Virus record (IMG/VR): IMGVR_UViG_3300021197_001489
Coordinates: 248,001-312,000 of that record
DNA: 64,000 bases
Direction: 5' to 3' (one strand)
Below the pieces are notes generated by a model. That model had not been told where the DNA came from, did no database searches, and saw only the letters and a program-made list of their open reading frames with translations. Shown here piece after piece: positions 1,632 through 51,075 of this stretch (the first letter of the stretch is position 1; every line of letters starts with the position of its first letter). A program made the translations under genes and the position numbers.

Positions 1632-3752
1632 ATGGCAACTGGTACAATTACATCAATGATATTAACGGCTGGTGCTAGCATGATAGCCAACGGCAGTGAT
1701 GCTGATCTTGGTGGCAAACCTATTGCTTCAAACAGTGGTGCGCCATTGAGTGTAACTGACAGTGTTAACAGTGAAGTTGGAGCACCAACATTAAAAGTCA
1801 TGAATGACTCCACACTAGAGATACAAGCACTACAAAGTGTTCTGTACACAGTCACAGCCAAGATTACATCAAATCTCAGCACAGCACAAATCAATGAATT
1901 TAGCAGCATGGCAAGCGGATTAGGCGAAAATGTGTTCACTGCGCCATTTGATCTGTATTCAGGAAATGCCTATGCAATACTACACACTGCTGATACTATC
2001 GACAGTGTAATGACATTTGGTCGTACAGAAAGTGCTACTGTGTTAGGCGGTTCATCCACTGCAACAGAAATTGAAGGAGATGCCAAAAAGCTAGGCACAA
2101 TCTTTGGCAGCGCAGTGGCATTTGTTGAAACAAGCAATCAATTCATCAATGCTGCAAATAACAGCGCCAATCTATTTACGGGCGGTACGTTTCCTGGAAT
2201 GGACAGTGTTGTATCTGGATCACTCACAGGAGTTAGTTTAGCCAGCCAGCCACTGGGTGCAGATCTAACTGCACTAGGTGACATTATCAGTTGGCCAAAC
2301 ATTACCAATCTTGGATCCCCAGGGCAACTATTAAGCAACATGCTTGTCAATGGAACACTTGGGCCAATGTATGCTAAATTAAAAACACTGACAGTAAATT
2401 CTCGTATTGCTGCTGTGCTAGGTGCCGACACCAGCACTATTGCCAATTTAACCAATCCAACCCCGACACTTAACGAGCTGGGCATTGACCTAAATCGCGT
2501 AGCAGAAATTGGCGCAAACTTGCCGCGTAGTGTACAACAACAAATTTACAATCTCTTTGTCAGTCTCGATACCACTGAGCTTGCACAAGTAAAAAGCATA
2601 CTGAAATGTACACAAACATACATTGTTACTGGTGCCGACCTGTTTGATCTAACAAAACAATTTCCTACCAGTTACATGACACTTACTGCACCGTCAAGTG
2701 CAAGCGGTATTAGCAACCGTGCTATCTATATAAACACATCTGGCAGTGTAAATGGATTATTTGACAGTCTAGGTTCAAGGTTAGCAAATATACTGCCCAG
2801 TGACTTTGCTGTTGCAAATGGCGCATTGGCTAGGAGTTTTGGGCAAATCAAAAATGTTGAAAACACCAATCTTAATACTTTCTCGACTGCAACAAACGCA
2901 TCTGAAACCATGAAAGACTTGCCACTTATACAAAATTTAACAACCTACATGCCTACAGGTGTTGTAAAATATTGGACCGACTACTACGGATTAACCAGCA
3001 ACATTGACCTTGCCACAGGGCCAAAAGGCAACTTTACACTTGCTGATTGCATCGGATATGCAGCAGGATTTAACAGTGCATTACCACTGAAACAAAACGC
3101 TAGATTACTAGCACAAATGAACACTGCTGGAGAACTGGATGTATTCTACAATGATGCCGGCAGTAGCAGTGCCACCACTGGTGTATTAAAGGTAATAGAG
3201 TACTTGCTGGATGGTGCATACGATCCATCGCCACCAGCAGTGTCGCCTTATGTAATACCAGGCGGTGTATACGGGGCTGGCTCGTATGCAACATTAGCCC
3301 TTGCTTACACAGCCCTTATTACAGCAGCCAAAAATCTGATGCAAAGTCAGTGGACAGCAAACACAACCGCGCAGAGTGTGCAAGCAAACTTCCAACGTAT
3401 CCAAGATCAACAAGCACGAGAGAAATTGAATCGTGTGAAAATGGATTTAGTGCTTGCTGATGTTCAAAGCCAAGACAGCAATGCAACCAGTTTAGCTTCA
3501 AGCCTTGCCAGTTATGCTCTTGAAGCAACTGACGGCGGCCCTAGTGAGTTTCTCGAACGCATTGCAAATTTTGATACGCTTGGTGGACAAGCAATGATTG
3601 CAGCAATGCGTGAAGCTAGAAACATCAGTGTGCTCGGTGCCGCCAATATTGAACAAGATGGTATACTTGACACTGCTCCTCCTGCTAATCCAGGCAGTTT
3701 TTTAAGTTCACAGTACACAGCCGCAGGTGCAGAAGCAATTATTGTAAAGTAA
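1632..3752 (+). CDS. Large hypothetical protein, probably virion/baseplate
   Basis: 706-aa Ala/Ser/Thr/Gly-rich ORF directly after the PAAR gene. Confidence 0.5.
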   Translation: MATGTITSMILTAGASMIANGSDADLGGKPIASNSGAPLSVTDSVNSEVGAPTLKVMNDSTLEIQALQSVLYTVTAKITSNLSTAQINEFSSMASGLGENVFTAPFDLYSGNAYAILHTADTIDSVMTFGRTESATVLGGSSTATEIEGDAKKLGTIFGSAVAFVETSNQFINAANNSANLFTGGTFPGMDSVVSGSLTGVSLASQPLGADLTALGDIISWPNITNLGSPGQLLSNMLVNGTLGPMYAKLKTLTVNSRIAAVLGADTSTIANLTNPTPTLNELGIDLNRVAEIGANLPRSVQQQIYNLFVSLDTTELAQVKSILKCTQTYIVTGADLFDLTKQFPTSYMTLTAPSSASGISNRAIYINTSGSVNGLFDSLGSRLANILPSDFAVANGALARSFGQIKNVENTNLNTFSTATNASETMKDLPLIQNLTTYMPTGVVKYWTDYYGLTSNIDLATGPKGNFTLADCIGYAAGFNSALPLKQNARLLAQMNTAGELDVFYNDAGSSSATTGVLKVIEYLLDGAYDPSPPAVSPYVIPGGVYGAGSYATLALAYTALITAAKNLMQSQWTANTTAQSVQANFQRIQDQQAREKLNRVKMDLVLADVQSQDSNATSLASSLASYALEATDGGPSEFLERIANFDTLGGQAMIAAMREARNISVLGAANIEQDGILDTAPPANPGSFLSSQYTAAGAEAIIVK

Positions 3753-3753
3753 A

Positions 3754-4302
3754 ATGTTTTTCTATGACAATGGTGAAATTTGTGTAACAGCTTTTAGTAG
3801 ATGTGGCCATACCAGTATGTATGAACACTTTGGGCTTCCTGTTTATTCTATTAATGGCAAAATTTCTGACTTTGCAAATTCTAAAACCAAAAAAAAAGTT
3901 TTGGTTGTAAGAAATCCCTACGATAGATTATTGTCGGCTGTCAATAATTCTAAAACACTTAAAGAAAATAATGTGTCATCTGATGATTACACACAATGGA
4001 CTATAGATCATTCAATCCCGCTTTTACAGGATCAAAGACTGCTTAACCTAGACTTTAAAATTATTGACTTTTACAAATTAAACAAGTACATTGGCTTTTC
4101 TAAAGTAACAGTAGTTACTAACTCAGTTAAGCCAGGGGCCTGGCTATGTAGTAAATCCATCTACGACGACTACATGATGCTTTATCATAGTCAAGAAGAA
4201 ATGGAAAGAGAATATCAGGCCTATCGAAGTATCATGATATCACACGACGAGATATCAGTTCCAGAATGGAAATTAATGGTTGACTTTTTGGATAAAAAGT
4301 AG
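3754..4302 (+). CDS. Sulfotransferase-family-like protein
   Basis: RCGHTSM (5'-PSB-like) and VRNPYDRLLSA (3'-PB-like) motifs. Confidence 0.6.
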   Translation: MFFYDNGEICVTAFSRCGHTSMYEHFGLPVYSINGKISDFANSKTKKKVLVVRNPYDRLLSAVNNSKTLKENNVSSDDYTQWTIDHSIPLLQDQRLLNLDFKIIDFYKLNKYIGFSKVTVVTNSVKPGAWLCSKSIYDDYMMLYHSQEEMEREYQAYRSIMISHDEISVPEWKLMVDFLDKK

Positions 4303-4348: not shown

Positions 4349-5740
4349 ATGATCAAATTCAACAAAGATGCGTTCAAAGCCGACGGCAGCGTAGTTGCAG
4401 CAGCAAAGTACAATGGATTACAGGTGGCCAGTGATTGGATCCGCGATCTTGAAGATGACAACAGTAGATTACACAAAGAAGGTGTAATTGAAAAAGCTCT
4501 CATAGCGGCCAGACTAGGTAGTTCTAGTGCTGAATGTTTTCTCTACAATTGTTATCTTGCATACAATCCCTATTTTACCTATAATGTAAAGCAGGTTCCG
4601 GAAACGGAAGGCCTAGAGCATAGAGAAAATCCTTGGGTACAGTTTTGGGGATTGTGTGAAAGTTTGCGCACACGCACACTGACAGGACATAAAGCCCGCG
4701 ACACTATTAAAATTATCAGCGAACGCTTTGACAGTGAGCAGTGGAACATGCTGGCACGTCGTGTGCTTATTAAAGATTTACGCTGTGGCATCACTGCAAA
4801 AACACTTAACAAAATATTGGGCAACAGCGAATGGAAGATTCCTGTATTTGAAGTACAGCTAGCGACAGACAGCAAAGGTCATCCTAAGAAGATGACTGGC
4901 TTGTGCAGGCTTGAGCCCAAGTTGGATGGCGTACGAACTATTGCTGTTGGATATCGCAATGGCACTGTGATGCTGTACAGTCGCAACGGTAAAGAGTTCT
5001 CTAACTTCCCTCATATTGCGGAGCAAGTGAGAGCATTGGTGCAAAAACACAACTTACGCTATGACTTGGTGCTGGATGGCGAAATTGTTGGCGACAGTTT
5101 CCAACAGTTGATGAAACATGCACACAGAAAAGATCATGTAGAAAACACTGCGGATTATCATGTTTTTGACATTATGCGCCTTCAAGAGTTAAAAGAAGGA
5201 CATTGCAATCGCAATCAACACAATCGTTTGCAAGCACTTGAAGCACTAGTTTCAATGAGCGGCTTACCAAACATACATCTAACAGATGGCTTTACTGTTG
5301 ATCTTTCTGATGATAATGGCCATAAAACAATGACAGAGTATGCTGAAAAATGTGTCGCTGAAGGTTATGAAGGCATTATGATTAAACGCCTGGACGCTCC
5401 GTATGAATGTAAACGTAGCACATTCTGGATGAAATGGAAACCAGTTATAACAGTAGACTTGGAGGTAATAGATATTGAAGAAGGCACAGGAAGAAACGAA
5501 GGGCGTCTTGGTGCGTTGGTATGCGAAGGTATTGATGATGGTCGTACTATACGGGTTAATGTTGGAAGCGGTTTGTCTGACAGTGATCGTGATAGTTATT
5601 GGGCTCGGCGCAATGATCTAAAAGGCTACATTGTAGAAATCAAAGCAGATGCTGTTACACAAAATCAAGACGGCACATACAGTTTGCGTTTCCCACGATT
5701 TGAAAGATTCAGAGGCTTTGAACCTGGCGAGAAACTGTAA
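4349..5740 (+). CDS. lig: ATP-dependent DNA ligase
   Basis: Motifs EPKLDG (adenylated Lys), LDGEI, HVFD, EGIMIK, KWK; C-terminal OB fold with VGSG and LRFPRF. Confidence 0.96.
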   Translation: MIKFNKDAFKADGSVVAAAKYNGLQVASDWIRDLEDDNSRLHKEGVIEKALIAARLGSSSAECFLYNCYLAYNPYFTYNVKQVPETEGLEHRENPWVQFWGLCESLRTRTLTGHKARDTIKIISERFDSEQWNMLARRVLIKDLRCGITAKTLNKILGNSEWKIPVFEVQLATDSKGHPKKMTGLCRLEPKLDGVRTIAVGYRNGTVMLYSRNGKEFSNFPHIAEQVRALVQKHNLRYDLVLDGEIVGDSFQQLMKHAHRKDHVENTADYHVFDIMRLQELKEGHCNRNQHNRLQALEALVSMSGLPNIHLTDGFTVDLSDDNGHKTMTEYAEKCVAEGYEGIMIKRLDAPYECKRSTFWMKWKPVITVDLEVIDIEEGTGRNEGRLGALVCEGIDDGRTIRVNVGSGLSDSDRDSYWARRNDLKGYIVEIKADAVTQNQDGTYSLRFPRFERFRGFEPGEKL

Positions 5741-31563: not shown

Positions 31564-31586
31564 TCTATTATAGCTACTCTCTTAAG

Positions 31587-31635
31587 GAGTAGTGAGACCT
31601 ATTCTTGCGGATCCGGTTTCACTACTCTTTTTTTT
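31587..31635. terminator. Terminator between convergent genes
   Basis: GAGTAGTGAGACC...GGTTTCACTACTC followed by a T run. Confidence 0.8.
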
Positions 31636-31636
31636 A

Positions 31637-31807
31637 TTAACGGCAACTGAATCCGTTTACTTCTGCAGTTAAACGCTTCTCAAGTTCTGCTACTGTGTAA
31701 CTTGCTTCACGGTACTTTAGTGGCTGTCCCATCGGGACGCCGGCCCACGAGCCAGTTTTTGCATTTGTAAAGTTCATTTTAAAAATATTCTTAAGCAGTT
31801 TAGTCAT
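31637..31807 (-). CDS. Small hypothetical protein (56 aa, not in ORF track)
   Basis: GGAG RBS; MTKLLKNIFKMNF...NGFSCR. Confidence 0.5.
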   Translation of the reverse strand: MTKLLKNIFKMNFTNAKTGSWAGVPMGQPLKYREASYTVAELEKRLTAEVNGFSCR

Positions 31808-31855: not shown

Positions 31856-32029
31856 TCATTTTGTATCTCCCATCATTAAATTTCTTGCTTCTTGGTAATA
31901 ACCCATTTGTGCTAGTGCGCTTGCAGCTCTTGCTCTGCCTATACTTTCAGTTATTTCCATACATTTTTCCAGTGTGTTTTCTACTGCATCACAAAATGTG
32001 CAGTATGTTTGTGTTAATACATGTGCCAT
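31856..32029 (-). CDS. Small hypothetical protein (57 aa, not in ORF track)
   Basis: MAHVLTQTYCTFC...GRARAASALAQMGYYQEARNLM; TAATG coupling. Confidence 0.6.
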   Translation of the reverse strand: MAHVLTQTYCTFCDAVENTLEKCMEITESIGRARAASALAQMGYYQEARNLMMGDTK

Positions 32030-32205
32030 TAATAATTAATTCCTTTAATTGGTGTTTTGCCTGTTGACATTAGGTGTTGGTATGCCCATTCCCAGTCAGC
32101 GCCATATTCTGTTTTTGCCCAGCATAACATTTGCTGGTCATATTGTTGTCTATTGCGTGATCCAAAAACCACACGTAGACTTGCAAATAACTTTTCAGTC
32201 ATCAT
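32029..32205 (-). CDS. Small hypothetical protein (58 aa, not in ORF track)
   Basis: AAGGAG RBS; ...MLCWAKTEYGADWEWAYQHLM... Confidence 0.6.
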   Translation of the reverse strand: MMTEKLFASLRVVFGSRNRQQYDQQMLCWAKTEYGADWEWAYQHLMSTGKTPIKGINY

Positions 32206-32225
32206 CTTTCTCCTTGATGTAATTT

Positions 32226-32358
32226 TTGCTTGAGGAAAGCAATACCGCGGTCTTTTCCGCCGTCAGTAGTCTTTGCTACCGTCATCTGCTTTTAAGGCGC
32301 GAGCCGCCCTAGTCTTTCCCAGTGCCACTCATTTTTTCGGAGCTGAGGTCGCTCTTTT
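32226..32358 (-). ncRNA. Candidate structured ncRNA or leader with three NAAAGA-loop hairpins
   Basis: GC-rich non-coding tract behind GATAAATA; hairpins CTGG-GAAAGA-CTAG, CGGTAG-CAAAGA-CTACTG, GCGG-AAAAGA-CCGC, TTGCTT-TCCTC-AAGCAA. Confidence 0.6.
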
Positions 32359-32454
32359 AATAAACTTATTTATCGAATAGTACAGCGATGCTTACGTTTT
32401 TTCGCGGTTCTGCGTTAAAATAACGCAGGTTTTTGCAACCAAAAGGCATTTTCT

Positions 32455-32508
32455 GGTTGACCTTTGATCTATATGTGTTATACTGTATGTACAGTTAGAA
32501 ACAAGGAG
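32455..32508 (+). promoter_or_regulatory. Early promoter with conserved leader (copy 1)
   Basis: ggTTGACC-17-TATACT then gtatgtacagttagaaacaaggag. Confidence 0.85.
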
Positions 32509-32514
32509 AAGCAA

Positions 32515-32763
32515 ATGATTAATTATATTGGTGCAAAAAACGGCGGTATTGAAATGTCAGACAGCAACAGTGTTGTTGGATTTTCTGATACTGCACAAGG
32601 CATTGCAAATATCATTTGCAAATACGGCTTGGATCGCAATGTGTATGGTAGTTCAACCATGGACTTTGCTGACGAAGAAGGCTTTGATCACTATGATGGC
32701 GCAAAGAATCTATGGGATCAAGCAGTTGATATCTATAACTGGAACGTAAACAAAGTAGCATAA
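32515..32763 (+). CDS. Early hypothetical protein
   Basis: ATG after the leader RBS AAGGAG. Confidence 0.6.
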   Translation: MINYIGAKNGGIEMSDSNSVVGFSDTAQGIANIICKYGLDRNVYGSSTMDFADEEGFDHYDGAKNLWDQAVDIYNWNVNKVA

Positions 32764-37971: not shown

Positions 37972-38649
37972 TTAGAATTTAGTATCTTTTTCAACATGCG
38001 GCTTACTTCCATCAATCATTGTACCTATGTCGTTTCTACGTCTGTCAAGCCAACTGTTTTCTACATAGTGTACATACTTTGCATTTGGATCTTTGTTTAG
38101 TATGTAATGCAGTTTTTCATTGCTGTAGTCAACTGGAATATCAAGTACACTATCTAAACTTTTTACATATTGATGTCTAAACATGTAAAGCAATTCAACA
38201 CTTAGAAAAGTGTGCTTGTATTCCATTAAGTCATCAATCTTATTTAAGTAGTTGTGTAAACTTTCTACACCTCTTTTACGCAGTTGATTTTGTGCAGTAA
38301 TGTTTTGGTCTCTGCCAATAATACCAACTTGTAAGTTGCCTTTTTCATTTAACCTGCGCAATACTTCTGCATAGTCAGGATACTTTGTTTGCCTTACGCC
38401 ATTACTATGATCTTTATCAACATAAGGACCACTAACACTTAGCACATAGTTTTCATGCTCTGTCCAGTCATAGGCGTCAATGTGTTCAGGCGTGTTCCAA
38501 ATATCTTTGTATGGAGCATTATCATGGTTTACCCAGTACTCACGCAACAGTTGATCCCAGCCATGCACATTGCTGTGCATGGATAAGACTTTGCTGAACA
38601 CATGGTTACCAGTGCCTTGTGGGCCACTTATAACTAGTATGTTTGCCAT
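37972..38649 (-). CDS. Sulfotransferase/P-loop-like protein
   Basis: VISGPQGTGNHVFSKVL and IIGRDQN. Confidence 0.5.
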   Translation of the reverse strand: MANILVISGPQGTGNHVFSKVLSMHSNVHGWDQLLREYWVNHDNAPYKDIWNTPEHIDAYDWTEHENYVLSVSGPYVDKDHSNGVRQTKYPDYAEVLRRLNEKGNLQVGIIGRDQNITAQNQLRKRGVESLHNYLNKIDDLMEYKHTFLSVELLYMFRHQYVKSLDSVLDIPVDYSNEKLHYILNKDPNAKYVHYVENSWLDRRRNDIGTMIDGSKPHVEKDTKF

Positions 38650-50712: not shown

Positions 50713-51032
50713 TGACATATGTAGTCACTGAGGCCTGCATTAAGTGCAAGCATCAAGACTGTGTCGAAGTATGCCCTGTAGATTGTTTCTATGAAGGCCC
50801 AAACTTTCTCACAATTGACCCTGATGAGTGTATTGACTGTGCAGTTTGTGTGCCAGAATGTCCTGTTGATGCAATTGTACCTGATTCAGAATCTGACCAA
50901 TTTTGGCTTGATCTTAATGCTGAACTGGCTATACTGTGGAAAGACAACAACATCACTGAAGTTGGCGAAGTTCCTGCAGATGCAGCCGAATGGAAAGACG
51001 TCAAGCTAAAATTGCACCTGCTAGAACGATAA
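50712..51032 (+). CDS. fdxA: Ferredoxin (FdxA-type, two Fe-S clusters)
   Basis: [29 protein letters not shown]...[17 protein letters not shown]. Confidence 0.96.
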
Positions 51033-51035
51033 TTT

Positions 51036-51075
51036 GGTTGACTTTGTCGCACACTATGTTATACTGTATACAGTG
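51036..51075 (+). promoter_or_regulatory. Early promoter with variant palindromic leader
   Basis: ggTTGACT-17-TATACT gtatacagt. Confidence 0.75.

What the first reader, a model, noticed from the sequence alone, without database searches (positions are those of the whole stretch)
32205..32373. Candidate novel structured RNA: three G-NAAAGA-C hairpins plus an anti-SD hairpin, heading an operon of unannotated small proteins
Seen (minus strand): late-type box GATAAATA (32373-32366), then ~135 nt of GC-rich non-coding sequence in an AT-rich genome. It contains CTGG-GAAAGA-CTAG (32322-32309), CGGTAG-CAAAGA-CTACTG (32281-32264) and GCGG-AAAAGA-CCGC (32260-32247). The stems differ in sequence but the loops share the consensus NAAAGA with a G-C closing pair, as expected for selection on structure. 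An outer helix GAGC...GCTC encloses the first hairpin. A fourth hairpin TTGCTT-TCCTC-AAGCAA has a loop region (UUUCCU) able to pair with the downstream SD AGGAGA (~32214-32209). Three 56-58-aa ORFs follow, two linked by TAATG, all missed by the ORF track. Inference: a multivalent protein-binding RNA (sponge like CsrB, or boxB-like antitermination site) or a translational switch, possibly bound by one of the small proteins. I do not recognise it as a known Rfam family.
Basis: partly seen in the sequence, partly recalled or inferred. Interest (0 to 1): 0.8.

Follow-up and report, generated by a model that had tools for sequence, protein, structure and literature searches.

The report
New structured leader RNA in marine phages
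The flagged stretch is a real, previously uncatalogued folded RNA that heads a small-protein operon in many uncultured marine phages; its helices are kept by compensating mutations, but what binds it and how it controls the genes is still inferred.

Summary
Homologous leaders occur in more than 60 distinct marine viral and metagenome contigs, always on the coding strand just upstream of a homologue of the first small ORF. A covariance model built only from distant relatives finds the window copy at 67.7 bits (E about 1e-15). Four helices covary strongly: 94% of cells paired against 73% in shuffles, and 20 of 24 pairs change on both sides. Loops keep N-A-N-A-G-A with a G-C closing pair and a 5' UGRC flank.

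Corrections: the outer helix GAGC...GCTC is not conserved and is replaced by a covarying hairpin, HP1b. The 'anti-SD' hairpin HP4 is almost invariant, so covariation cannot test it, and folding gives little SD pairing in the window. No Rfam family matches.

In relatives the operon often carries DUF1127 or DUF3563 small proteins; a DUF1127 protein is a known RNA binder.

Most likely this is a cis-acting, protein-responsive leader that controls translation or stability. That mechanism is inferred. An sRNA/sponge role, a riboswitch and antitermination remain open. It is a new RNA family of a known general kind.

The parts
32367..32374 (-). Promoter-like box GATAAATA (TATAAATA in most relatives)
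   Evidence: Sequence. 37 of 64 distinct upstream contexts have TATAAATA and 15 have NATAAATA within 120 nt of the motif. That it is a T4-type late promoter is inferred.
32340..32354 (-). P0: 5'-proximal hairpin GAGC-GACCTCA-GCTC
   Evidence: In the minimum-free-energy fold. Stem invariant and loop variable in window-type relatives. Absent in L165 and in the distant type, so it is dispensable.
32309..32322 (-). HP1: CTGG-GAAAGA-CTAG, preceded by GTGGCA
   Evidence: Helix 1 of model R1. All 5 pairs show changes on both sides across the family; 96.8% of cells paired.
32296..32308 (-).
   Evidence: Stems seen include GGCG/CGCC, AGCG/CGCT, GCCG/CGGC, AGCAT/ATGCT, CGCAT/ATGCG, GGCAT/ATGCC and GGCTG/CAGCC. 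Helix 2: 5 of 5 pairs change on both sides.
32282..32295 (-). Linker TTAAAAGCAGATGA. Its AAAGCAG (32292-32286) can pair with TTGCTTT (32242-32236), forming 'P-alt'
   Evidence: The P-alt fold is within about 1 kcal/mol of the HP4 fold. Linker variants are only C/T or A/G changes that keep pairing. Inferred, not proven.
32264..32281 (-). HP2: CGGTAG-CAAAGA-CTACTG
   Evidence: Aligned to helix 3 of R1, which is a C-CAAAG-G hairpin in distant relatives. 5 of 5 pairs change on both sides.
32244..32263 (-). HP3: GCGG-AAAAGA-CCGC, with lower pairs A-T and C-G around a G/G mismatch
   Evidence: 11 different fully paired stems in 34 distinct close relatives, with the loop kept. Helix 4: 4 of 4 pairs change on both sides.
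32226..32242 (-). HP4: TTGCTT-TCCTC-AAGCAA, the invariant pyrimidine-loop element
   Evidence: GGTATTGCTTTCCTCAAGCA is identical in loci fetched by protein homology with ORF1 at only 60-74% identity. Its core stays nearly invariant down to about 35% ORF1 identity. Helix 5: 2 pairs never vary and 1 changes on both sides. L267 shows a compensated variant, GATTT/AAATC.
32224..32329 (-). Match to covariance model R1, which was built from distant relatives
   Evidence: 67.7 bits, E = 1e-15. It is the only hit in the 64-kb window.
32209..32214 (-). Shine-Dalgarno AGGAGA of ORF1
   Evidence: Sequence. Complementary to TTTCCT of HP4, but the predicted pairing probability is 0.02.
32029..32205 (-). ORF1, 58 aa, 'WAKTEYGxDWxxAY' family
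   Evidence: 13 close homologues. The profile search finds 189 clusters. No Pfam family.
31856..32029 (-). ORF2, 57 aa (YCxFC ... ARAAS.LA.MGYY)
   Evidence: Conserved in the operon of relatives. Start overlaps the ORF1 stop as TAATG.
31637..31807 (-). ORF3, 56 aa, possibly a divergent DUF3563-like protein
   Evidence: hhalign against DUF3563-like operon partners: probability 23%, E = 9e-4. Inconclusive.
31577..31640 (.). Long hairpin at the end of the operon, between convergent genes. A T-run follows on the + strand and an A-run precedes on the - strand
   Evidence: Sequence. Picked up as a spurious mir-71-like hairpin on both strands.

Best explanation
The stretch is the 5' leader of the mRNA for a three-gene small-protein operon. 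It is a member of a previously uncatalogued family of structured RNAs in uncultured marine phages.

Anatomy. The RNA is built from modular hairpins. Each unit has a 5' UGRC(R) flank, a 4-6 bp stem of free sequence closed by G-C, and a hexaloop N-A-N-A-G-A. One structural hairpin (HP1b) and an almost invariant pyrimidine-loop element (HP4, GGUAUUGCUUUCCUCAAGCA) complete it. HP4 lies 11-25 nt before the ribosome-binding site in most members.

Proposed mechanism (inferred). The repeated loops are operators for an RNA-binding protein. The small proteins of the operon are the first candidates; in many relatives these include DUF1127 or DUF3563 types. Occupancy would decide which of two nearly isoenergetic folds the 3' part takes: HP4, or a helix between the linker and the 5' half of HP4. 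That choice would set translation initiation and/or mRNA stability of the operon in cis.

Confidence. About 0.9 that it is a real structured RNA family. About 0.4 that the cis-acting, protein-responsive mechanism is right; the confidence field gives the latter.
For: Shown:
- Hairpins at the stated coordinates.
- Homologous leaders in more than 60 distinct contigs, always upstream of an ORF1 homologue on the same strand.
- A model built from distant relatives finds the window copy at 67.7 bits and nothing else in the window.
- Among about 80 unrelated viral loci the model's confident hits were further true members of the family; six weaker ones (13-22 bits, E 0.002-0.6) remain unassigned, and two of them overlap the gut-phage hairpin arrays.
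- Covariation: 94.1% of cells paired against 73.4% in shuffles; 235 against 59 cells changed on both sides; 0 of 500 shuffles reach this; slid controls give 29-46%.
- RNAalifold on the MAFFT alignment recovers HP1 and HPx independently, and HP3 in part.
- 25 distinct stems but only 7 loop variants, all N-A-N-A-G-A. 51 of 56 hairpin instances have G[AG]C in the 5' flank, against 23% expected.
- G-U cells outnumber A-C cells 44 to 23 on this strand.
- The leader is far more conserved than ORF1.
- RNA-library contigs cover the leader plus ORF1. One run has depth only over 31962-32405.

Supporting the mechanism, all indirect:
- The hairpin number varies from 1 to 5, as expected for modular operators.
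- The HP4 and P-alt folds are within about 1 kcal/mol in the window. Across 48 members the ensemble difference is -0.4 +/- 0.3 kcal/mol.
- Linker substitutions keep P-alt pairing.
- DUF1127 genes lie in the operon of about half of the distinct viral relatives. DUF1127 CcaF1 binds RNA (PMC8034643).
Against: - No binding, structure-probing or reporter data exist.
- The window's own operon has no recognisable DUF1127, and ORF3's link to DUF3563 is inconclusive.
- HP4 has no covariation support. RNAalifold prefers another pairing for that region, GGGG with CCUC.
- Predicted SD sequestration is negligible in the window: 0.02, with SD accessibility 0.71 against 0.70.
- Three types of ORF1-bearing phage loci lack the motif (L226, L234, L255), so it is not obligatory.
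- The same hairpin unit occurs in unrelated gut-phage contigs before other genes. This argues for a general factor rather than an operon-specific protein.
- The model-fitted alignment leans towards the structure it was fitted to.
- Contigs from RNA libraries can contain DNA.
Confidence: 0.4

Rival explanations
1. [quoted passage not shown] The invariant C/U-rich HP4 loop would act as a seed against purine-rich host ribosome-binding sites. This would be a phage analogue of the alphaproteobacterial Cuckoo/CcsR RNAs that sit beside DUF1127 genes.
For: HP4 is invariant over phages whose ORF1 is only about 35-45% identical, as expected for a seed aimed at a conserved external target. In one group of relatives the motif directly follows another gene and is followed by a terminator-like hairpin before ORF1. 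DUF1127 genes are in the operon. CcsR RNAs lie in the 5' or 3' UTR of DUF1127 genes and carry anti-SD loops (PMC8034643).
Against: In the window and most relatives no terminator or known processing site separates the RNA from ORF1. There is only one pyrimidine loop, UUUCCUC rather than CCUCCUCCC, and no Rfam ar14 or CcsR match. No target is known. There is no significant complementarity to E. coli 16S rRNA.
Confidence: 0.17
2. A small-molecule riboswitch. The linker:HP4 helix (P-alt) would close a three-way junction made of HP2/HPx and HP3, with conserved junction strands UGACG, UGCACCG/UGACG and GG. HP4 would be the expression platform.
For: Junction nucleotides are highly conserved. There are two near-isoenergetic folds that share one strand. 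Linker changes are compatible with pairing.
Against: The number and kind of hairpins inside the supposed junction vary from 1 to 4, which is unusual for a ligand pocket. Conserved terminal loops repeated in tandem point to a macromolecular partner. The downstream genes give no hint of a ligand. P-alt has no two-sided covariation, because HP4 does not vary.
Confidence: 0.12
3. A transcription antitermination site, nut/boxB-like or put-like. The hairpins would load a factor on RNA polymerase so that it reads through downstream terminators.
For: The loops are purine-rich and closed by G-C, resembling the boxB loops GAAAA/GAAGA (my own knowledge). In one relative group (L142, L145, L161, L177, L206) and in other phage arrays (L050, L055) a strong terminator-like hairpin follows the element.
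Against: The loops are hexaloops whose first base varies, not a GNRA-like pentaloop. No boxA-like CGCUCUUUA is in the leader (read). The window has no terminator between the leader and the ORFs. The operon ends at a hairpin facing a convergent gene, so read-through has no obvious purpose. No N-like protein was identified.
Confidence: 0.1
4. A passive 5' stabiliser or processing module. The hairpins would protect an abundant late mRNA from 5'-end-dependent decay, with no specific effector.
For: The position is at the extreme 5' end, behind a conserved promoter box. Similar arrays precede probably highly expressed structural genes in other phages. Copy number is variable.
Against: Simple stabilisers do not need an invariant loop sequence, a conserved 5' flank or a 20-nt invariant element.
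Confidence: 0.1
5. A DNA-level signal (operator repeats, iterons or an origin) rather than an RNA.
For: It lies in a divergent intergenic region and contains repeated short motifs.
Against: Stems change freely with compensation while loops stay fixed. G-U pairs are favoured on the coding strand (44 against 23). The motif always has one orientation relative to ORF1.
Confidence: 0.03

Closest known systems
Cuckoo / CcsR RNAs (Rfam ar14 group) next to DUF1127 genes in Alphaproteobacteria, with the RNA-binding DUF1127 protein CcaF1 (PMC8034643)
   Same: A multi-hairpin RNA in the UTR of an operon of very small proteins. A C/U-rich, anti-SD-like hairpin loop. DUF1127 genes in the same operon in about half of the phage relatives.
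   Different: There is only one pyrimidine loop, UUUCCUC rather than CCUCCUCCC. The other loops are purine-rich NANAGA or CAAAG. No Rfam match. The window's own operon has no recognisable DUF1127. The setting is phage-borne and marine.
Lambda-type nut sites (boxA plus the boxB hairpin bound by N)
   Same: Short G-C-closed hairpins with A-rich purine loops in an early part of a phage transcript. Some relatives have a terminator-like hairpin downstream.
   Different: The loop is a hexaloop with a variable first base. There are 1-5 copies. No boxA, no N-like protein seen, and no terminator in the window's leader.
Phage 5'-UTR motifs of unknown function: GP20-a and GP20-b (RF02991, RF03003), and the candidate structured RNAs of Fremin et al. 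2023 (PMC10690425)
   Same: Covarying structured RNAs placed directly upstream of one phage gene family, found only by comparative genomics.
   Different: No match to GP20-a or GP20-b, or to any other Rfam model. The downstream gene family is different. I could not check whether it is one of the 10,006 unnamed candidates, because the supplements are not held.
CsrB/RsmZ-type protein sponges
   Same: Many hairpins that present the same short loop motif.
   Different: The defining GGA in the loops is absent; the loops read NANAGA. The RNA is a leader fused to an mRNA, not a free-standing sRNA with its own terminator.
ANTAR dual-hexaloop substrates
   Same: Tandem small hairpins with conserved hexaloops that a protein reads (my own knowledge of Ramesh et al. 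2012).
   Different: The conserved positions differ: A2, A4, G5 and A6 here, against A1 and G4 there. In the window the last hairpin does not overlap a terminator.

Membership tests
Any Rfam 15 family | Score at or near the family's gathering threshold | tested here: not met
   No hit in the window at gathering thresholds. Nothing in the leader at E up to 10. Nothing on the motif in 8 diverse relatives at E up to 1.
Lambda nut / boxB | 5-bp stem with a GNRA-like pentaloop (GAAAA, GAAGA or GACAA) | tested here: not met
   All 56 distinct hairpin instances have the 6-nt loop N-A-N-A-G-A. The first base is G, A or C.
Lambda nut / boxB | A boxA element (CGCUCUUUA-like) beside boxB | tested here: not met
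   None in 32206-32373, read. The nearest is UGCUUUCCUCAA inside HP4.
Lambda nut / boxB | Downstream terminators that are read through, and an N-like arginine-rich protein | tested here: inconclusive
   No terminator between leader and ORFs in the window. Terminator-like hairpins are present in one relative group. No search for an N-like protein was possible.
CsrB/RsmZ sponge | Repeated (A)GGA motifs in hairpin loops | tested here: not met
   Loops are GAAAGA, CAAAGA, AAAAGA, GATAGA, GAGAGA, GACAGA and AAGAGA. None has GGA within the loop.
Cuckoo / CcsR RNA | Two or more hairpins whose loops carry CCUCCUCCC | tested here: not met
   There is a single loop, UUUCCUC. No ar14 or CcsR-type Rfam hit.
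Cuckoo / CcsR RNA | Adjacency to a DUF1127 gene (CIN1 context) | tested here: inconclusive
   Not met in the window. Met in relatives: Pfam DUF1127 twice in L289, and the signature in 31 of 59 distinct viral loci.
ANTAR substrate | Two hexaloops with A at position 1 and G at position 4, the second overlapping a terminator | tested here: not met
   The conserved positions here are A2, A4, G5 and A6. No terminator overlaps in the window. The definition is from my own knowledge.
Riboswitch (general) | A fixed aptamer architecture with a conserved core, plus an alternative-pairing expression platform | tested here: inconclusive
   Conserved junction strands and two competing folds are present. The helix number is not fixed.
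Type III toxin-antitoxin RNA (ToxI-like) | Near-identical tandem direct repeats followed by a terminator and a toxin gene of about 170 aa | tested here: not met
   The units differ in stem sequence. The downstream proteins are 56-58 aa.
GP20-a / GP20-b phage leader motifs | Rfam RF02991 or RF03003 match upstream of a GP20 gene | tested here: not met
   No Rfam match in the window, in relatives or in the gut-phage arrays. No GP20 Pfam domain downstream.

The most novel reading that the evidence does not exclude
The hairpin unit (5' UGRC flank, free stem closed by G-C, N-A-N-A-G-A loop) may be a general recognition code for an as yet unknown RNA-binding factor. Unrelated phages would use it: marine jumbo and T4-like phages, and human-gut phages. 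They place it in tandem before selected genes. In the marine lineage it would be coupled to DUF1127/DUF3563-type small proteins. That would make a phage counterpart of the CcaF1-Cuckoo RNA module, perhaps acquired together with host (Pelagibacterales-like) small-protein genes.
Probability: 0.25. Interest if true: 0.8.

Novelty: new variant of a known kind. Interest (0 to 1): 0.66.

Why it matters
Few structured regulatory RNAs of phages are understood. This one is widespread in ocean viromes and is supported by unusually clear covariation. It is tied to a family of tiny proteins that also occurs in Pelagibacterales-type genomes. Its link to DUF1127-type proteins offers a concrete and cheap experiment: test RNA against the small proteins. 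That experiment could reveal how phages use small RNA-binding proteins. The recurring hairpin unit in unrelated phages hints at a shared factor that is still unknown.

Tried and rejected
- **Rfam.** No match at gathering thresholds or at permissive thresholds, on the window, on 8 relatives or on 8 other hairpin-array loci.
- **Cultured phages.** No DNA or protein match for the leader, for ORF1 or for a distant-type leader and ORF1.
- **Outer helix GAGC...GCTC around HP1.** Rejected, because relatives replace the 3' arm by HP1b sequences.
- **16S rRNA mimicry or complementarity.** This was a lead from memory. Local alignment to E. coli rrsH on both strands is no better than shuffles.
- **Anti-SD sequestration by HP4.** Complementarity exists, but predicted pairing is 0.02 in the window and 0.16 on average. 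Kept only as a weak possibility.
- **Regulon idea.** Only one further G-NANAGA-C hairpin lies in the 64-kb window, at 38315, so there is no genome-wide set here.
- **First DNA pattern scan.** Mostly noise. It nevertheless contained true family members and the gut-phage arrays.
- **ORF3 as DUF3563.** Inconclusive.
- **Protein atlas for ORF1 and ORF2.** Only unnamed clusters.
- **Supplements of the IMG/VR structured-RNA catalogue.** Not held.
- **Pseudoknot between the GGAAGUU loop and a downstream AACUU.** Not consistent across members (read).

Full report
**1. What is in the window**

The window comes from a 316-kb viral contig, IMGVR_UViG_3300021197_001489. It has no near relative among 50,697 deposited phage genomes.

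On the minus strand the intergenic region between two divergent genes reads as follows:
- a box GATAAATA (32374-32367);
- a small hairpin P0 (32354-32340) and an A-rich stretch;
- HP1, CTGG-GAAAGA-CTAG (32322-32309);
- HP1b, GGCG-GCTCG-CGCC (32308-32296);
- a linker, TTAAAAGCAGATGA;
- HP2, CGGTAG-CAAAGA-CTACTG (32281-32264);
- HP3, GCGG-AAAAGA-CCGC (32260-32247);
- HP4, TTGCTT-TCCTC-AAGCAA (32242-32226);
- an A-rich spacer, the SD AGGAGA (32214-32209) and the ATG at 32205.

Three ORFs of 58, 57 and 56 aa follow. The first two are joined by TAATG. The operon ends at a long hairpin (31577-31640) that faces a convergent gene.

Three G-NANAGA-C hairpins within 75 nt is far more than chance: the whole window has four, and block shuffles give 1.7 per window. 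The thermodynamic signal of the single sequence is modest (z = -2.0). No Rfam family matches.

**2. Relatives**

*Gathering them.*
- ORF1 has 13 close homologues at 60-100% identity.
- The contigs that encode them carry the same leader.
- From P0 to the SD the leader is almost identical, although ORF1 is only 60-74% identical.
- An exact search for the 21-nt HP4 element found 65 metagenome and 10 viral stretches. These give 51 distinct leaders.
- A profile of ORF1 finds 189 protein clusters.
- A scan of viral contigs with this profile returned 80 loci with ORF1 at 35-100% identity.
- Nearly all of those loci carry a recognisable version of the RNA.
- Three ORF1-bearing locus types lack it (L226, L234, L255).
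- The cellular homologues in Pelagibacterales/HIMB59 genomes lack it too.

*Covariance model.*
- A covariance model (R1) was built only from the distant type. It hits the window at 32329-32224, minus strand, with 67.7 bits and E about 1e-15.
- It gives one hit per locus, always on the ORF1 strand.
- Among about 80 loci fetched by the hairpin pattern scan, its confident hits outside the window's own contig were three further true members. Six weaker hits (13-22 bits, E 0.002-0.6) remain. Two of these, L022 and L059, overlap the gut-phage hairpin arrays of section 6.

**3. Structure**

*Close relatives.* HP3 occurs with 11 different stems, all fully paired, while the loop stays NANAGA.

*Whole family (59 distinct rows).*

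| Measure | Observed | Control |
|---|---|---|
| Cells forming a standard pair | 94.1% | 73.4% in shuffles; 29-46% with slid partners |
| Pairs with a change on both sides | 20 of 24 | mean 14.5 of 24 in shuffles |
| Cells changed on both sides | 235 | 59 in shuffles |
| Shuffles reaching the observed values | 0 of 500 | - |

- HP1, HP1b, HP2/HPx and HP3 are each supported by these counts.
- That alignment was fitted to the model, so it leans towards the structure.
- RNAalifold on the plain MAFFT alignment recovers HP1 and HPx on its own, and HP3 in part.
- The stems listed by simple parsing tell the same story.
- G-U cells outnumber A-C cells 44 to 23, which fits the ORF strand being the RNA strand.

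*The hairpin unit.*
- It is defined beyond its stem. The 25 distinct stems carry only seven loops, all N-A-N-A-G-A, with a G-C closing pair.
- 51 of 56 instances have G[AG]C in the 5' flank, usually UGAC or UGGC, against 23% expected.
- 38 of 56 instances are followed by GG.
- The number of such hairpins varies from one to five.
- In distant members one position holds a C-CAAAG-G hairpin. Another often holds CCGG-GGAAGUU-CCGG.

HP1b takes its place.

**4. The 3' element**

- GGUAUUGCUUUCCUCAAGCA is the most conserved part of the RNA. It does not vary, so covariation can neither support nor reject HP4.
- One divergent member has a compensated stem, GAUUU/AAAUC (L267).
- Two other pairings compete for the same strand.
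  - The linker (AAAGCAG in the window; AAGUGAU or GCAAU elsewhere) can pair with the 5' half of HP4. Every linker variant seen keeps this pairing.
  - RNAalifold prefers GGGG with CCUC.
- In the window the HP4 fold and the linker fold differ by about 1 kcal/mol.
- Across 48 members, enforcing or forbidding HP4 changes the ensemble energy by only -0.4 +/- 0.3 kcal/mol.
Predicted SD:loop pairing is nevertheless 0.02 in the window and 0.16 on average, and SD accessibility changes little.
- A two-state 3' domain is therefore plausible. The simple anti-SD picture is weakly supported.

**5. Context**

- *Promoter box.* TATAAATA or NATAAATA lies within 120 nt upstream in 52 of 64 distinct contexts. 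Some relatives have an extended -10 box instead. That the box is a T4-type late promoter is an inference.
- *Transcription.* Contigs from four marine metatranscriptomes lie on the region.
  - One spans ORF1 and the leader (32026-32336). One run has depth only over 31962-32405.
  - In that run a high-depth contig starts about six bases upstream of 32357, just after the box.
  - This fits a leader transcript. Contigs carry no strand, and DNA carry-over cannot be excluded.
- *The operon.* It is conserved as ORF1, a DUF3563-like or DUF1127 protein, and ORF2.
  - DUF1127 is confirmed by Pfam twice in L289. Its signature is present in 31 of 59 distinct viral loci.
  - A DUF1127 protein, CcaF1, binds RNA. 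It sits next to Cuckoo/CcsR RNAs, whose loops carry an anti-SD motif (PMC8034643).
  - The window's ORF3 is at best a remote DUF3563 relative.
- *A variant arrangement.* In one group of relatives the motif directly follows another gene. A terminator-like hairpin then precedes ORF1.

**6. A wider pattern, seen in passing**

The same hairpin unit appears in tandem (3-4 copies) directly before the SD of other genes in unrelated contigs. Examples:
- L008 and L085, with stems CGCG against CGTG/CACG;
- L012;
- L022 and L059, before a phrog_13908 protein whose relatives come from human faecal viromes;
- L050, L055 and L112.

None matches Rfam or the GP20 motifs. This suggests a modular unit read by a widely available factor.

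**7. Interpretation**

*Settled.* This is a genuine, conserved, structured RNA on the coding strand. It forms the 5' leader of a small-protein operon and is absent from Rfam.

*Inferred.* It acts in cis as an array of protein operators that controls translation or stability through the two-state 3' domain.

*Rivals.* The alternatives are a released sRNA or sponge of the Cuckoo type, a small-molecule riboswitch, an antitermination site, a passive stabiliser and a DNA signal. They are weighed in the Rival explanations section.

*Membership.* It fails the defining features of boxB/nut, CsrB, Cuckoo, ANTAR, ToxI and GP20-a/b. It may already be among the unnamed candidates of a 2023 IMG/VR screen (PMC10690425), which I could not check.

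**8. Verdict**

This is a new RNA family within the known kind of structured phage leader RNAs. The mechanism is unresolved.

Noticed in passing
L008 about 5135-5202(-), L085 about 2784-2852(+), L012 about 4178-4249(-), L022 about 5247-5316(-), L059 about 4087-4159(-), L050, L055, L112: Tandem arrays of 3-4 copies of the same hairpin unit (UGAC-type flank, free stem, G-GAAAGA-C or G-GACAGA-C loop). They lie directly upstream of the SD of other genes in unrelated viral contigs. In L012, L022 and L059 the downstream gene is a phrog_13908 protein, with relatives in human faecal viromes. No Rfam or GP20 match.
   Followed up: partly
L289 1151-1204 (-): A glutamine riboswitch (RF01739, 49 bits, above the gathering score). 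It lies about 150 nt from the RNA motif and points the other way, in a marine viral contig.
   Followed up: no
L294-L307 (genome contigs): ORF1-family genes paired with a DUF3563 gene occur in Pelagibacterales and HIMB59-type MAGs and single-cell genomes, without the RNA motif. This may hint at the host range of these phages or at the origin of the gene pair.
   Followed up: partly
window 32457-32484 (+) and about 51040-51075 (+): Strong sigma-70-like promoters, TTGACC/TTGACT-16-TATACT. Each is followed at once by a short palindrome (CTGTATGTACAG or CTGTATACAG). This looks like a shared early-promoter/operator design.
   Followed up: no
window 32409-32429 (+): A terminator-like hairpin, TCTGCGTTAAAATAACGCAGG followed by TTTTTG, on the + strand. 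It lies between the two divergent promoters, antisense to the region just upstream of the leader's promoter box. It is not conserved in relatives.
   Followed up: partly
window 32240-32261 and 32530-32551: A 22-nt inverted similarity (82%) between the HP3/HP4 junction of the leader and the first codons of the divergent gene. Both transcripts therefore carry a similar GG.G.AAAA.AC.GCGGUAUUG string. It may be chance.
   Followed up: no
window about 50800-51030 (+); L003 3008-3370, 4162-5301: Auxiliary-type genes in this phage lineage. The window has a ferredoxin-like ORF. Related contigs have a class I cytochrome c-like ORF, a serine hydroxymethyltransferase-like ORF and plastocyanin-family (cupredoxin) genes just downstream of the small-protein operon (L200, L150, L206).
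   Followed up: no
window 38315 (-): One more G-CAGAGA-C motif with a 4-bp stem (TTGG/CCAA), outside the leader. It is probably chance.
   Followed up: no
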